Assembly (NCBI RefSeq): GCF_947568905.1 | Contig: NC_079168.1 | Location: 57,660,001-57,724,000 of the forward strand | Source of the DNA: Ostrea edulis | Taxonomy: Eukaryota | DNA: 64,000 bases | Direction of reading: 5' to 3' | In this document: positions 1 to 38,383 of the stretch, piece by piece | How positions within the stretch are numbered: position 1 is the first letter of the stretch | Layout of the letters: each line of letters opens with the position of its first letter | The notes under the pieces: model-generated | What the model saw: the letters and a program-made list of their open reading frames with translations, nothing else | The model's database searches: none | Told to the model about the DNA's origin: nothing | Translations under genes and position numbers: made by a program

Positions 1-898
1 GATTAAAGCCTCCCAATCCGATCCCAGGTCCCATATTGGCGCTAGATGCGGAAGCAGCGGCAGATGAACCACCGACACCATTATATACTGGTCCGGATGG
101 ATATTGGACGGCTGGCGCTTGGTAAGCAGCTGGTCCATTGAAAGATCCAACAATTTGGGGATAGGTGGCGACTGAATTTCCACCAATGAGTCCGGCATTT
201 AATCCATTATTGAGACCAATTACGCCATGTTGTCCACCAACTGCTTGGTTTGAGGCGGCGGCGGCAGCGGCGGCGGCAGCAGCGTTGAAACCACTTGCAG
301 CTGCTGAGGCAGCAGCTGAGTTTCCACCGATGAGTCCAGCATTAAATCCATTATTGAGGCCAATTACGCCATGTTGTCCACCTACTGCTTGGTTTGAGGC
401 GGCGGCGGCAGCAGCGTTGAAACCACTTGCAGCTGCTGAGGCAGCAGCTGAGTTTCCACCGATGAGTCCAGCATTAAATCCATTATTGAGGCCAATTACG
501 CCATGTTGTCCTCCAATTGCTTGGTTTGAGGCGGCGGCGGCAGCGGCGGCGGCAGCGTTGAAACCACTTGCAGCTGCTGAGGCAGCAGCTGAGTTACCAC
601 CGATGAGTCCGGCATTAAATCCTCGGTTTGAGGCGGCTGCGGCAGAGGCAGCAGCGTTGAAACCACTTGCAGCTGCTGAAGCGGCGGCTGCGTTTTCTCC
701 ATCTAATGGAAAAAACCTGGCTTCAAATCCATTGTCGTTGACACCACTGTGTATACCCCCAGCAACACCTTGTCCATTAAAGTGGATGTTGTGAGAACAT
801 CCGTACTGTCCACATCCTGGTTTAGGATAATTATCCCTTGGAACAGGGATTGCAAATGCAACGGCAATAAGACAGAGAACGGCAACAGCACGGATCAT
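1..898 (-). CDS. Silk-like poly-Ala/Gly/Asn secreted protein, copy A1 (Shelk2-like shell-matrix candidate); C-terminus runs off the window
   Basis: Manual translation from ATG at 898: MIRAVAVLCLIAVAFA signal peptide, GCGQYGC, then [15 protein letters not shown](A)nSNQ repeats. Frame is open to base 1 and nearly identical to 15741..17051. Confidence 0.9.
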   Translation of the reverse strand, partial: MIRAVAVLCLIAVAFAIPVPRDNYPKPGCGQYGCSHNIHFNGQGVAGGIHSGVNDNGFEARFFPLDGENAAAASAAASGFNAAASAAAASNRGFNAGLIGGNSAAASAAASGFNAAAAAAAAASNQAIGGQHGVIGLNNGFNAGLIGGNSAAASAAASGFNAAAAAASNQAVGGQHGVIGLNNGFNAGLIGGNSAAASAAASGFNAAAAAAAAAASNQAVGGQHGVIGLNNGLNAGLIGGNSVATYPQIVGSFNGPAAYQAPAVQYPSGPVYNGVGGSSAAASASSANMGPGIGLGGFN

Positions 899-1831
899 CT
901 ACAAAACAGACGAAAATCAACTTTATTTGCTTAAAAAAAGTAAGATTTCACAGTTTATATCTAAGGCACTCTGTACAGAATGAAAATAATATCAACAAAT
1001 TTGAGGGGGGGTCCTGTTAGAATTGATTTCAAAATTAAAGAAATTTACTATAATCCAGACCGTATTTGCTTTACGGACAGACACTGGGAAGATTTTTTTT
1101 ACTCCTGTATATTTATATCTGTTGTTTACTCAAATTGTTAAAATTATTGATTTCTGTGAAATTTCTGCCTGAAAGATGTATATAAAGGATGCTTTCCGTA
1201 GACATTAATGTTTAAATAATTACGCCATACTTTTAGGGATGGTTAGTATTTCGCGACGAATCATCTTGATTTTTTAAAAATATTGAAATCGATACTGGTC
1301 ATGTAGTGATATATGCATCTCCATTGATCATAAATTTGATCTCATTATGATAGATTGGTTACCTTAAGCTTGATTGGAATAATAATGAGGAGAGATGATT
1401 CGATTACACATTTCTTACTAACCAACATTGAAAGGAAGAAAGATCTGATAATTTTTAAATTAATAGAAACAGGCCTGGAGATTTTGAAATTGGGATAAAA
1501 GATAGGAAATTTAAATTTTGGCAATCTGTATCATACCAGGCTACTATTATATGAAGAGTAAAATATTACCGTTTAAAAAAAAGAATGTTCCTACGTTTCG
1601 AATTTTAGATCTTAGTGTATAAGTTCATTTTCATTTCATACAATTTTTTACCAACTGCGTGTAATATAATCTCCGATTTTTATATTTAGCATTATTACTT
1701 GCAAAATTGTTATTCATTTTACAGCAAGAAGTCTAAGATATTAAGAATTGAATTAAGAAGAAATACACTTTTTAGGTTTCATCGCACTTTTCTTGAGAAA
1801 TTCATAGTGTAAAGTTGGATTGGAGTCTCAC

Positions 1832-2031
1832 CTTGAAATCGTTGTGTCGGTACCTGAGCAGACCTAGACGTTAAGTGTTGATTAATTCTAAATCTTCAAT
1901 ATTTATACATTTAGCTCGGTAACGTAATCAGGAAGAATATCATTGCGGTTCGAACATTTCTGATTACTCAGTAAAATTTAATTCAGTATCATTGGGTCGT
2001 TTTAATTAGAAACAATGTGAATAGGTCATTA
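1832..2031 (-). promoter_or_regulatory. A1 promoter plus non-coding exon 1 (~1879-1832)
   Basis: Minus strand: TATAAATA at 1907-1900, TCAAC initiator-like site ~28 nt downstream, donor CAAG|GTGAGA at 1832/1831; intron 899-1831 ends TTTTGTAG|ATG. Conserved block at 1914-2031. Confidence 0.75.
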
Positions 2032-2276
2032 AGGTGTAAAGAATGAATGACGCAATGCTTTTTCCACGTTCGCTAGTAACGTCGTTATCGTACACATTTC
2101 TGTCAAATGATGGCTTTAAAGTACTTATTTTAGTTTTTCGTTGACACGGTTTCTCCCATTTTTCTTTGGATTGTATTCATCGTTTTTATAGATTTATTAT
2201 TAAAGATGAGAAGTATATTAAGGGGATGGGACACCAAGGAGTCAATTATCTTTCTATCTTTGAAGTTCTCCACAAA

Positions 2277-37024: not shown

Positions 37025-37030
37025 TTTATT
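37025..37030 (-). terminator. Polyadenylation signal of C
   Basis: Same conserved AATAAA context. Confidence 0.6.
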
Positions 37031-37222
37031 CAAAGAACAATAATAAATTTAACAAAAACAGTCTCAATCACCAAAGTTGTTTGTATGTGTCTATCACAGT
37101 CCGCTTTAATACTGCTTGTACATTAGTACACCTGAAAATCAAATTGAAGAATTACATTGATATCCAGAGTGAATAACACAAATGTAATTTATTTCAAAGA
37201 TACTTGTAAAGATAACAAAGGG

Positions 37223-38383
37223 TTATTTATGAAGTCTTACCTTTCTGCCAGGGACAATGTTGGAGTTGATAATCCTTGGTGATCTCCCTTGCAAAATGCC
37301 ACCGTCAATAAATCCTTGGGATCCAGATGCAGCAGCGGACGCGGATGCGGCACCGTTGGAAGTAGCAAAACCAGCGGCGGCAGCTGCAGCTCCGGGGTTT
37401 TGTCCGATAAGGGGACCAACAGGGTATGGTACACCTTGGAAAGGCTGAATTACAGGACCATTAAGGTGACCTGTGAGTTGGGATCCAATGAGACCTCCCA
37501 TTCCGATTCCTGATCTCAAGTTGGCGCTAGAGGCAGCAGCAGCAGCGGAGGCGGCACCGCGTTGGCTGGCAGAGGCAGCGGCGGAGGCAGCAGCAGCTCC
37601 GGGGTTTTGTCCAGTTAAGATGGGATTAAACATGAAATTGTTGATGCGATTTGTAAATTGAGGTGCAGTAAAACCTCCCATTCCGATTCTAGGTCCCATA
37701 TTGGCGCTAGATGCGGAAGCAGCAGCAGATGAATCGCCGACACCATTGAATACTGGTCCGGATGGATAATGCACGCCTGGCGCTTGGTAAGCAGGTAGTA
37801 TATTAAAAGGTCCAACATTCTGTGGAGAGGTGGCGACTGAGTTTCCACTCATGACTCCAGCATTAAATTCATTGTTGAGGCCAATTACACCTTGATGTCC
37901 ATTAAATCCTCTGTTTGAGGCGGCTGCGGCAGAGGCAGCAGCGTTGAAACCACTTGCAGCTGCTGAGGCAGCAGCTGCGTTTCCCCCAATGAGTCCGGCA
38001 TCAAATCCATTGTTGAGGCCAATTACTCCTTGATGTCCATTAAATCCTCTGTTTGAGGCGGCTGCGGCAGAGGCAGCAGCGTTGAAACCACTTGCAGCTG
38101 CTGAGGCAGCAGCTGAGTTTCCACCGATGAGTCCGGCATTAAATCCATTGTTGAGGTCAATGACACCTTGATGACCACTAAATCCTTGATTTGAGGCGGC
38201 TGCCGCAGAGGCAGCAGCGTTTAAACCACTTGCAGCTGCTGAGGTGGCGGCTGAATGCCCATTAAAGTGGATGTTGTGAGAACATCCGTACTGTCCACAT
38301 CCTGGTTTAGGATAATTATTCCTTGGAACAGGGATTGCAAATGCACCGGCAATAAGACAGAGAAGGGCAATAGCACGGATCAT
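37223..38383 (-). CDS. Silk-like poly-Ala secreted protein, copy C (386 aa)
   Basis: Intact ORF with the same termini; lacks the QGVAGGIHSGVNDNGFEARFFPLDGG segment of the other copies. Confidence 0.92.

What the first reader, a model, noticed from the sequence alone, without database searches (positions are those of the whole stretch)
1..38383. Five-gene tandem array of secreted silk-like poly-alanine proteins in three structural classes
Seen: five minus-strand ORFs with no frame disruption, sharing a 16-aa signal peptide, a Cys pair (GCGQYGC), ~38-41-aa modules GGN(S/A)[11 protein letters not shown](A)nSN..G..GV.G.NNGF.AGLI, and (in the four complete copies) a basic tail GRKV(K/R)L(N/H)K. 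They fall into types A, B and C with different module counts and spacers. Established: oyster Shelk2 is a multicopy, mantle-expressed silk-like shell protein with GXN(A)nS motifs, and poly-Ala runs form beta-sheet crystallites in spidroins. Inference: this is a Shelk2-related or separate family tuned for a graded series of crystallite and linker lengths, possibly forming a composite shell or ligament scaffold.
Basis: partly seen in the sequence, partly recalled or inferred. Interest (0 to 1): 0.8.

Follow-up and report, generated by a model that had tools for sequence, protein, structure and literature searches.

The report
Oyster silk-like secreted protein gene array
This stretch of the European flat oyster genome holds a real tandem family of six genes for secreted, alanine-rich, silk-like proteins of an oyster-only family. 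The family is already known from Pacific and eastern oysters as "spidroin-1-like" and probably includes Shelk2, so this is a good new member of a known kind rather than a new kind of thing.

Summary
The window is Ostrea edulis chromosome DNA (G000:C5:57660001-57724000). It carries five minus-strand paralogues, and a sixth lies 10 kb outside the window.

**What the proteins share**
- A 16-residue signal peptide.
- A YPK..GCGQYGC N-terminus.
- A conserved C-terminal part.

- The "basic tail GRKV(K/R)L(N/H)K" is intron read-through. All copies splice right after GRK, across a 107-110 nt intron, to a micro-exon encoding V-Y-stop.
- The genes are not intronless. A non-coding 5' exon with a TATA box lies 0.6-1.5 kb upstream.
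- Genes g1+g2 and g3+g4 are a 16-kb two-gene unit duplicated at 97% identity.

**Family placement**
- The non-repetitive N-terminus alone matches only oyster proteins: C. virginica "spidroin-1-like" at E about 1e-13, plus Saccostrea. An exhaustive profile search of 1.84 billion representatives found nothing named outside Ostreidae.
- There is no Pfam, PDB or spidroin domain, and no transmembrane segment. AlphaFold2 sees only disorder.

**Function**
- The most likely role is a mantle-secreted, insoluble silk-like framework protein of the shell. This rests on homology and is not shown here.
- I could obtain no RNA or proteomic evidence for O. edulis, and I could not retrieve the deposited Shelk2 sequence.

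Interest is moderate to low.

The parts
1..898 (-). g1, main coding exon (exon 2), cut by the window start. The complete gene is at G000:C5:57659597-57660898. Its spliced product is 430 aa, long class: one truncated R-type module plus three Q-type modules with (A)6-10.
1832..2031 (-). g1 promoter block and non-coding exon 1. TATAAATA lies at 1907-1900; exon 1 ends at 1832 and is followed by GTGAGA. Intron 1 is 899-1831.
   Evidence: the transcription start site is inferred, not shown
11547..11555 (-). g2 exon 3, a micro-exon reading GTG TAC TAA (V, Y, stop). AATAAA lies at 11454. Intron 2 is 11556-11665 (110 nt).
   Evidence: the product equals NCBI model P0002 (XP_056020910.1)
11666..12718 (-). 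g2 exon 2, running from the ATG to the GRK codon. The spliced product is 353 aa, short class: two R-type modules plus the FTAPQFTNR insert.
13810..13885 (-). g2 TATA box (13885-13878) and 5'UTR exon 1 (ends at 13810). Intron 1 is 12719-13809.
15643..15651 (-). g3 exon 3 (GTT TAC TAA). Intron 2 is 15652-15758 (107 nt). AATAAA lies at 15550.
15759..17051 (-). g3 exon 2. The spliced product is 433 aa, long class, with poly-Ala runs up to 11. It is 98% identical to g1.
17992..18067 (-). g3 TATA box (18067-18060) and 5'UTR exon 1 (ends at 17992). Intron 1 is 17052-17991.
26271..26279 (-). g4 exon 3 (GTG TAC TAA). Intron 2 is 26280-26389 (110 nt). AATAAA lies at 26178.
   Evidence: the product equals NCBI model P0061 (XP_056020912.1)
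26390..27457 (-). g4 exon 2. The spliced product is 358 aa, short class, and is the duplicate of g2.
28991..29066 (-). g4 TATA box (29066-29059) and 5'UTR exon 1 (ends at 28991). Intron 1 is 27458-28990 and carries extra inserted DNA.
37123..37131 (-). g5 exon 3 (GTG TAC TAA). Intron 2 is 37132-37240 (109 nt, GTAAGA...TTTTCAG). AATAAA lies at 37030.
37241..38383 (-). g5 exon 2. The spliced product is 383 aa, intermediate class: three R-type modules, the first of which replaces the QGVAGGIHSGVNDNGFEARFFPLD segment.
   Evidence: (P0001 = XP_056020913.1)
38950..39026 (-). g5 TATA box (39026-39019) and 5'UTR exon 1 (ends at 38950). Intron 1 is 38384-38949.
1..29750 (.). Tandem duplication of a roughly 16-kb two-gene unit. 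Window -1483..14660 (g1+g2) matches 14661..29750 (g3+g4) at 93.7-97.0% identity in three collinear blocks. There are no N in the region.

Best explanation
This is a tandem array of six paralogous genes in Ostrea edulis. Five lie in the window.

**The genes**
- Each gene has three exons: a short non-coding exon behind a TATA box, one large exon encoding all but two residues, and a micro-exon encoding Val-Tyr-stop.
- The family is restricted to true oysters (Ostreidae). RefSeq calls its Crassostrea members 'spidroin-1-like' or 'antifreeze protein Maxi-like', and it very probably includes Shelk2 of the Pacific oyster.

**The proteins**
- The products are secreted, intrinsically disordered, slightly basic proteins. 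The secreted part is 19-27% Ala, 16-18% Gly, 9-10% Asn and 9-11% Ser.
- The N-terminal part is built from 44-48-residue modules. Ala/Ser blocks (AAASAAAS followed by AAASAAAAS or pure A6-11) alternate with Gly/Asn/hydrophobic linkers ([17 protein letters not shown]).
- A Tyr/Pro-rich spacer follows, then a conserved C-terminal half holding further short Ala/Ser blocks.

**Likely mechanism (inferred from the family and from silk-like shell proteins in general; not shown here)**
- The proteins are secreted by mantle epithelium into the shell-forming space.
- There they assemble into an insoluble framework. The Ala blocks pack into beta-sheet-like crystallites, and the Gly/Asn linkers stay amorphous and give toughness.
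- The C-x4-C pair and the Tyr residues offer cross-linking sites.
- Unequal crossing-over among modules, gene duplication and a recent 16-kb segmental duplication produced paralogues with two to six modules and different Ala-run lengths.
For: **Anatomy and conservation**
- ORFs, signal peptide and modules.
- Splice sites conserved in all six copies.
- NCBI models end in GRKVY.
- Most pairwise dN/dS values are 0.4-0.7, with mixed GCT/GCC/GCA Ala codons.

**Homology that does not rest on low complexity**
- Residues 1-70 alone hit only oyster proteins among 5.8 billion: C. virginica spidroin-1-like P0012 at 3.6e-13 and Saccostrea P0003 at 3e-12.
- A profile of N-termini found 10 representatives in 1.84 billion. 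All named ones are Ostreidae.
- The C-terminal 84 residues are 51% identical to C. virginica P0007.
- The full length is 37% identical to Saccostrea P0003, E 1e-41.

**Shared gene structure**
- In S. echinata the intron after GRK (96 nt) and the T-Y-stop micro-exon are conserved. Tandem neighbours occur in both S. echinata and C. gigas.
- The O. edulis promoter block is 73-76% conserved upstream of both Saccostrea genes.
- More distant O. edulis paralogues at 4.0 and 8.2 Mb have the same RK|intron|V-Y-stop structure.

**Secreted and unfolded**
- The only hydrophobic segment is the leader. The maximum 19-residue Kyte-Doolittle hydropathy elsewhere is 1.05-1.18.
- AlphaFold2 mean pLDDT is 41, with only the leader helical. 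The ESM Atlas model has pLDDT 0.35.
- There are no Pfam, NCBIfam or PDB matches.

**Function by homology**
- Crassostrea spidroin-1-like genes are treated as mantle biomineralisation genes (PMC13465682 citing Zeng & Guo 2022; PMC12040131).
- Shelk2 is listed as a poly-Ala silk-like shell protein (PMC6542584). Its paper's title places it in the mantle edge before shell regeneration (reference).
Against: - There is no expression evidence for O. edulis. No run on record as RNA holds the stretch, and the four runs laid are genomic contigs that cover introns and spacers unspliced.
- There is no proteomic evidence. The 259-protein C. gigas shell proteome is reported to lack silk-like proteins (PMC5379566).
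- Shelk2 and spidroin-like hits in shell proteomics elsewhere rested only on low-complexity peptides (PMC6542584).
- C. virginica spidroin-1-like transcripts were also reported as differentially expressed in gill and gonad samples.
- Beta-sheet formation by such short, Ser-interrupted Ala blocks is assumed, not predicted. AlphaFold2 gives coil.
- Identity of any relative with the deposited Shelk2 sequence was not tested.
Confidence: 0.6

Rival explanations
1. The gene family is the same, but the products build a non-calcified extracellular material rather than the matrix of the calcified layers. Candidates are periostracum, hinge ligament, or the cement or adhesive of the attached valve.
For: - The composition is neutral to basic and hydrophobic, with very few Asp/Glu (5-9 per protein). 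That is unlike acidic mineral-binding proteins.
- Tyr-Pro motifs could be tanned by tyrosinase.
- Silk-like proteins were reported missing from the C. gigas shell proteome (PMC5379566).
- In C. gigas a spidroin-like glycine-rich gene rises at metamorphosis together with tyrosinases (bioRxiv 10.1101/2020.03.25.004614). It is not known whether that gene belongs to this family.
Against: - There are no tissue data.
- Insoluble framework proteins of calcified layers, such as MSI60-type proteins, are also non-acidic (general knowledge).
- The long K/R-free stretches, up to 229-233 residues in g1/g3, could by themselves explain poor detection in tryptic shell proteomics.
Confidence: 0.2
2. These are secreted low-complexity proteins unrelated to hard parts. 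They might be a mucus or gel component, or a precursor processed at the conserved G-R-K site (dibasic cleavage with possible C-terminal amidation) into something else.
For: - The motif (G)(R/K)K followed by one or two residues ending in Tyr is the most conserved feature of the whole superfamily, and it sits exactly at an exon boundary.
- C. virginica relatives were seen in gill and gonad differential-expression lists.
Against: - There is only one such site per 350-430-residue protein.
- The bulk of the sequence is modular Ala/Gly/Asn, as in structural silk-like proteins.
- The gill and gonad samples may include adhering mantle tissue.
- No antimicrobial or peptide-hormone family was matched.
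Confidence: 0.1
3. Part of the array is an assembly artefact. The g1+g2 and g3+g4 units would be the two haplotypes of one 16-kb locus laid in tandem, so the true array would have four genes.
For: - The two units are 97% identical and collinear, with indels. That is within the range of allelic divergence in highly heterozygous oysters.
- Haplotypic duplications are a known assembly error (PMC10548655 abstract).
Against: - The 94-kb region is gap-free (no N).
- The units differ by a roughly 1.5-kb indel and by poly-Ala lengths.
- RefSeq annotates g2 and g4 as separate genes.
- Tandem copies are also seen in Saccostrea and C. gigas.
Confidence: 0.1

Closest known systems
Crassostrea 'spidroin-1-like' / 'antifreeze protein Maxi-like' tandem genes (C. 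virginica XP_022334984, XP_022333633; C. gigas XP_034323079-82, XP_065944505), probably including Shelk2 (Takahashi et al. 2012, Gene 499:130)
   Same: - Homologous signal peptide, YPK motif and (in C. virginica) GCGQYGC.
- GGNSAAA(A)SAAASG(L/F)N first module.
- GQN(S/P)G...SGS(N/Q)GF(I/N)(D/G)GG...VPG(R/K)K.Y C-terminus.
- Intron directly before the ATG.
- Tandem multicopy arrangement.
   Different: - The Ostrea copies are longer (353-433 aa against 274-340 aa).
- They repeat a 44-48-aa module two to six times.
- They use Ser-interrupted or A6-11 blocks after GFN, rather than the GQNA9/GRNA9 blocks of Crassostrea.
- They have a Tyr/Pro spacer and the FTAPQFTNR insert.
- The C. gigas genes lack intron 2 (GKKY is contiguous).
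- Identity of these genes with the deposited Shelk2 was not verified.
Saccostrea echinata / S. cucullata orthologues (LOC133183294, LOC133183295, 'elastin-like', 'fibroin heavy chain-like')
   Same: - 35-40% identity end to end, E 1e-41 to 5e-49.
- Same three-exon structure with the intron after GRK and a two-codon last exon.
- Tandem pair.
- Promoter block 73-76% conserved.
   Different: - Saccostrea proteins have one module only and Ser/Thr-richer blocks in place of poly-Ala.
- Module amplification and long pure Ala runs are features of the Ostrea array.
O. edulis paralogue subfamily on the same chromosome (about 4.02-4.07 Mb and 8.17 Mb; C. gigas A0A8W8HMH4, A0A8W8HMZ2)
   Same: - Signal peptide, YPK and GCG(Q/P)(W/Y)GC.
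- GSA(n)/GNA(n)/GQNA(n) Ala blocks.
- Identical exon logic: acceptor just before the ATG, GTAAG donor right after RK, a 112-167 nt intron, and a V-Y-stop micro-exon.
   Different: - Shorter (about 200-250 aa spliced).
- Central Tyr/Pro/Gln-rich YPGQYY repeats.
- No GVIGLNNGF linkers.
- The promoter block is not shared.
Spider spidroins (MaSp1/2)
   Same: Alternation of poly-Ala blocks and Gly-rich linkers; secreted; mixed Ala codons; modular repeat evolution.
   Different: - No Spidroin N- or C-terminal domains (Pfam scan negative) and no PDB sequence match.
- The proteins are ten times smaller.
- The linkers are Asn-rich rather than GGX/GPGXX.
- The resemblance is convergent composition, not homology.
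Pinctada MSI60 and other bivalve silk-like framework proteins (silkmapin, Hic74)
   Same: A functional analogy: Ala- and Gly-rich, insoluble, non-acidic framework proteins of shell (PMC6542584; PMC4944945).
   Different: None appeared in any sequence search seeded with the whole protein or with the N-terminus, so there is no detectable homology.

Membership tests
Ostreidae silk-like 'spidroin-1-like'/Shelk2-type family | Significant similarity of the non-repetitive N-terminus (signal peptide, YPK, CGQYGC, NGFE..GFDGGN) | tested here: met
   Word search on residues 1-70 alone hit C. virginica P0012 at 3.6e-13 and Saccostrea P0003 at 3e-12. See also alignment A1 and the exhaustive profile search.
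Ostreidae silk-like 'spidroin-1-like'/Shelk2-type family | Conserved C-terminus ...GQN.G(A)n...SGS.GF..GG....I.....VPG(R/K)K(V/T)Y | tested here: met
   51% identity over the last 84 residues with C. virginica P0007. K381 and Y383 are invariant in alignment A2.
Ostreidae silk-like 'spidroin-1-like'/Shelk2-type family | Gene structure: intron immediately before the ATG, and a terminal intron after the dibasic pair with a two-codon last exon | tested here: met
   Met in all six Ostrea copies, in S. echinata and in subfamily b. C. gigas keeps the first intron but lacks the second.
Ostreidae silk-like 'spidroin-1-like'/Shelk2-type family | Poly-Ala motifs GXNA(n)(S) and GSA(n)(S), as I recall from the Shelk2 paper's abstract (from memory; the paper is not held) | tested here: inconclusive
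   The Ostrea proteins have GGN(S/A)AAAS, GFNA(n)S and GSSAAAS, so X is G or F rather than Q or R. The Crassostrea relatives have GQNA9, GRNA9 and GSA(n).
Ostreidae silk-like 'spidroin-1-like'/Shelk2-type family | Direct sequence match to the deposited Shelk2 protein | not testable with these tools
   No entry carrying that name appeared, and none in the supplements of PMC6542584.
Ostreidae silk-like 'spidroin-1-like'/Shelk2-type family | Mantle-edge expression and induction before shell regeneration | not testable with these tools
   No RNA run was found, and the runs laid are genomic DNA.
Spider spidroins | Folded spidroin N-terminal and C-terminal domains flanking the repeats | tested here: not met
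   The Pfam scan found no family at E <= 1, there was no PDB sequence match, and AlphaFold2 finds no folded domain.
'Transmembrane protein DDB_G0289901-like' (the RefSeq name of these genes) | A membrane-spanning segment in the mature protein | tested here: not met
   The maximum 19-residue Kyte-Doolittle hydropathy outside the leader is 1.05-1.18, below the usual 1.6 threshold. The name reflects composition only.
Pinctada MSI60-type framework proteins | Detectable sequence homology | tested here: not met
   No MSI60-type protein was among the hits.

The most novel reading that the evidence does not exclude
The array and its sister subfamily form an oyster-specific silk gene superfamily. Its markers are the YPK-CGQYGC N-terminus, a promoter block conserved between Ostrea and Saccostrea, and a V-Y micro-exon after a dibasic pair.

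On this reading, paralogues with two to six modules and 4-11-residue Ala runs are deployed in different shell fabrics: foliated, chalky, prismatic or ligament. They would have escaped shell proteomics because most of their length lacks tryptic sites. That would overturn the statement that oyster shells lack a silk-like framework and so restore the chitin-silk model for oysters.
Probability: 0.2. Interest if true: 0.55.

Novelty: new member of a known kind. Interest (0 to 1): 0.33.

Why it matters
Whether oysters use a silk-like framework in their shells is disputed. The C. gigas shell proteome was read as lacking such proteins, yet Shelk2-type genes are mantle-expressed.

This work gives a fully resolved six-gene array in the commercially and ecologically important flat oyster. 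It supplies correct exon models, paralogue-specific peptides and a conserved promoter block. Those are concrete reagents for testing which shell layer, if any, each paralogue builds.

It is also a clean example of how module amplification and segmental duplication diversify low-complexity structural genes.

Finally, it corrects misleading RefSeq names ("transmembrane protein DDB_G0289901-like") and a plausible but wrong C-terminal "basic tail".

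Tried and rejected
**Expression evidence**
- The look-up of sequencing runs returned no run on record as RNA.
- The four best holders, laid on window 36800-40000, are contigs that cover intron 2 and the spacers unspliced, so they are genomic DNA. Nothing can be said about expression.

**Shelk2 sequence and paper**
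- The name was not found in any protein search, in supplements or in the paper library.
- A word-start search for 'shelk' only returned surnames.

**Accession and name searches in papers**
- Searches by accession number and by 'DDB_G0289901' found nothing.
- Zeng & Guo 2022 is not held.

**Family and structure scans**
- Pfam, NCBIfam and PDB gave no matches.
- ESM Atlas neighbours ('fibroin heavy chain-like', 'loricrin-like') score 0.84, below the level that means anything.
- AlphaFold2 with a 15-sequence alignment gave only disorder, so no fold search was run.

**Readings rejected**
- Spidroin membership and a transmembrane reading were both rejected (see the membership tests).
- P0044, an 807-aa protein with CDAYGC repeats, matched profile positions 28-57 only. 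I set it aside as unrelated.
- The plus-strand ORF at 165-794 is the antisense frame of the GCN-rich exon, not a gene.
- ARAGORN found no tRNA in the tRNA-like insertion in g4 intron 1.

- Searches used exon-2 references and the NCBI models P0001/P0002/P0061 by id.
- The joined (spliced) products of g0, g1 and g3 were built only inside scripts, for alignment and composition.
- The step of looking up the joined models was left out.

Full report
**Where we are.** The window is G000:C5:57660001-57724000 of an 895-Mb assembly. Exact protein matches identify it as Ostrea edulis, on a 94.3-Mb chromosome record.

**The observation**

They share:
- the leader MIRA(V/I)A(V/L)LCLI..AFA, followed by IPVP;
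- YP(K/Q)(P/A)GCGQYGC;
- a set of Ala/Ser-Gly/Asn modules;
- a Tyr/Pro spacer;
- a near-identical C-terminal 130 residues.

A six-frame search of the whole genome shows that the copy cut by the window start is complete (a 433-codon ORF). It also shows a sixth copy, g0, 10 kb further upstream at 57649212-57650510. No other close copies exist in the genome.

Tandem Repeats Finder gives module periods of 132-144 nt, with 2.1-3.2 copies and 89-92% matches. Modules are therefore 44-48 aa, not 38-41.

There are two module subtypes:
- R-type: [21 protein letters not shown].
- Q-type: A6-11 SNQA(I/V)GGQHGV(I/M)G.

They are distributed as follows:

| Genes | Modules |
|---|---|
| g2, g4 | 2 R-type |
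| g5 | 3 R-type |
| g1, g3 | 1 truncated R-type + 3 Q-type |
| g0 | 1 R-type + 5 Q-type, no Tyr/Pro spacer |

**Gene models**

In every copy the codons for GRK are followed by GT(A/G)A(A/G)A. After 107-110 nt comes a pyrimidine tract, then CAG and GT(G/T) TAC TAA. The products therefore end in VPGRKVY. That is exactly how the NCBI models XP_056020910, XP_056020912 and XP_056020913 end.

Upstream, an alignment of the six 5' flanks shows a highly conserved block. It contains TATAAATA, then about 55 nt ending CGATTTCAAG|GTGAGA. A variable intron of 0.57-1.5 kb follows, and the acceptor TCTGTTTT(G/C)TAG abuts the ATG. The "118-bp promoter block" noted earlier on this window (s1-311923) is thus the core promoter plus a non-coding first exon. 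The transcription start is inferred.

**Evolution of the array**

Self-comparison shows that window -1483..14660 (g1+g2) and 14661..29750 (g3+g4) are collinear at 93.7-97.0% identity, without gaps. This is a recent segmental duplication of a two-gene unit, or less likely two haplotypes laid in tandem.

Pairwise dS is 0.03-0.05 within the duplicated pairs and 0.11-0.25 otherwise. Most dN/dS values are 0.4-0.7, with extremes of 0.23 (g1/g3) and 0.99 (g2/g4). Ala codons are a GCT/GCC/GCA mix with almost no GCG.

All six frames and all splice sites are intact, so these are functional genes under moderate constraint.

**Relatives**

A whole-protein word search finds Saccostrea proteins at E 5e-49 to 6e-44, then Crassostrea "spidroin-1-like", "antifreeze protein Maxi-like" and "glycine-rich protein 1-like".

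Poly-Ala can inflate such scores, so I searched residues 1-70 alone:
- Only seven proteins matched among 5.8 billion, and the five that carry a source name are oysters (the other two are unnamed ENA proteins). They include C. virginica spidroin-1-like at 3.6e-13 and S. echinata at 3e-12.
- A profile of 18 N-termini (A1), run exhaustively against 1.84 billion representatives, gave 10 hits. All named ones are Ostrea, Saccostrea or Crassostrea/Magallana. One unrelated protein matched a short Cys motif.

Further evidence of common descent:
- The C-terminus is 51% identical to the C. virginica protein.
- In S. echinata two genes sit in tandem. Each has the intron after GRK (96 nt) and a T-Y-stop micro-exon, and each is preceded by a 90-120 nt stretch 73-76% identical to the Ostrea promoter block.
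- In C. gigas two genes sit in tandem. The intron before the ATG is kept, but GKKY is contiguous.

More distant O. edulis paralogues lie at about 4.02-4.07 and 8.17 Mb on the same chromosome. They begin MLRF..., carry GGCGQWGC, GSA(n)/GNA(n)/GQNA(n) blocks and YPGQYY repeats, and have the same RK|intron|V-Y-stop logic. They have C. gigas counterparts.

Together these define an oyster-restricted superfamily with two subfamilies. The array belongs to subfamily a.

**Is it Shelk2?**

The Crassostrea members carry GQNA9, GRNA9 and GSA(n) blocks. That fits what I remember of the Shelk2 abstract: two poly-Ala motifs, multiple copies, mantle-edge expression, induction in regeneration.

That memory is a lead, not a test. 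The paper is not held, and no database entry under that name turned up.

I therefore file the array in the oyster spidroin-1-like family with confidence, and in "the Shelk2 family" only as probable.

**What the proteins are like**

- The secreted part is 19-27% Ala, 16-18% Gly, 9-10% Asn and 9-11% Ser.
- K+R (10-16) exceeds D+E (5-9). There are 6-9 His, 5-8 Tyr, exactly two Cys and no Trp.
- There is no hydrophobic segment beyond the leader, so the RefSeq label "transmembrane protein DDB_G0289901-like" is an artefact of composition.
- Pfam, NCBIfam and PDB give nothing.
- AlphaFold2 with the family alignment gives mean pLDDT 41, with only the leader helical. The ESM Atlas model has pLDDT 0.35.
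- These are intrinsically disordered, modular, non-acidic secreted proteins. That is the profile of insoluble silk-like framework proteins, not of acidic nucleators.

**Function**

The most likely role is a mantle-secreted framework protein of the shell. Ala blocks would act as packing units, Gly/Asn linkers as the amorphous phase, and Cys and Tyr as possible cross-links. Each step is inference from the family and from silk-like proteins in general (PMC4944945; PMC6542584; PMC13465682).

Points against, or at least unresolved:
- No RNA run could be found, and the runs I laid are genomic.
- The large C. gigas shell proteome is said to lack silk-like proteins (PMC5379566).
- C. virginica relatives also appear in gill and gonad lists.

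K/R-free stretches reach 229-233 residues in g1/g3. This offers a possible reason for under-detection by tryptic proteomics. However, shared peptides such as [10 protein letters not shown] should still be visible, so the argument is weak.

Periostracum, ligament or cement are live alternatives.

**Verdict**

The array is real and well resolved, with six genes rather than five and corrected exon structure and C-terminus. It is an Ostrea expansion of a known oyster silk-like family.

The "graded crystallite series" idea fits the different Ala-run lengths but is untested.

- Novelty: new member of a known kind.
- Interest: moderate to low.

- Only 3,201 letters were given to read laying.
- No N was filled.
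- The joined g0/g1/g3 products were used only inside scripts and were not searched.

Noticed in passing
G000:C5:57649212-57650510 (L005:1212-2510, minus strand), outside the window: A sixth member of the array (g0) with an intact promoter block and intact splice sites. Its spliced product is 429 aa, with six modules and no Tyr/Pro spacer, which makes it a fourth structural class.
   Followed up: yes
window 1832-2031, 13810-13990, 17992-18170, 28991-29070, 38950-39130; L010:9270-9358 and L010:17936-18054: The promoter block upstream of the TATA box is near-invariant among the Ostrea paralogues. It is 73-76% conserved upstream of both tandem Saccostrea echinata orthologues, with a weak 29-nt hit in C. 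gigas (L011:9317-9345). It is a candidate shared cis-regulatory module.
   Followed up: partly
G000:C5 about 4.02-4.07 Mb and 8.17 Mb (L002:4993-5760, L003:2113-2856 and 8143-9081, L004:4970-5662, L007:4915-5745; all minus strand): A sister subfamily of secreted Ala-block proteins with YPGQYY repeats. It shares the signal peptide, the YPK/GCGQWGC motif and the RK|intron|V-Y-stop micro-exon, but not the promoter block.
   Followed up: partly
window 39261-39474: Word depth of 1e4-1e6 in all four DNA runs, against about 10-100 in the flanks, with many rearranged joints. This is a very abundant dispersed or satellite-like repeat, about 250-450 nt upstream of the g5 TATA box.
   Followed up: no
window 27458-28990 (g4 intron 1) and 12719-13809 (g2 intron 1): Insertions are shared by g2 and g4, and an extra one of several hundred nt is unique to g4. 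The g4-only insertion includes a tRNA-like stretch that is probably SINE-derived, although ARAGORN calls no tRNA.
   Followed up: partly
L011:10001-10927 (C. gigas) versus window genes: The C. gigas relatives encode ...VPGKKY-stop contiguously, so the terminal intron was lost (or never gained) in that lineage. C. virginica and Saccostrea keep it.
   Followed up: partly
window 165-794 (+): A 209-codon antisense ORF across the g1 repeat region. It is a mechanical by-product of GCN-rich coding sequence, not a gene.
   Followed up: yes
window 5090-5801, 21276-21990, 46766-47532: Three copies (83-89% identity) of a retroelement fragment with a reverse-transcriptase-like ORF. Two of them are part of the duplicated 16-kb unit.
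   Followed up: no
window 61776-63572 (+) and 51014-51622 (+): Retroelement remnants. One ORF has a sub-threshold Pfam RVT_1 match (63294-63572). The 50-56 kb region shows strong positive GC skew.
   Followed up: no
window 58284-59807 (-): A 507-codon ORF with several hydrophobic segments in its C-terminal half and no Pfam match. It may be an exon of a multi-pass membrane protein gene next to the array.
   Followed up: no
window 33564-33835 and 49508-49882: A 134-nt unit repeated twice at 99% identity in the g4-g5 spacer, and a short coding-looking minisatellite with (T/I)TPHDD repeats.
   Followed up: no
C-termini of all family members (for example window 37241-37252 plus 37123-37131): The motif Gly-(Arg/Lys)-Lys followed by one or two residues ending in Tyr is conserved across both subfamilies and three genera, and it is split by an intron. 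It resembles a dibasic processing and amidation site. Its meaning is unknown.
   Followed up: no
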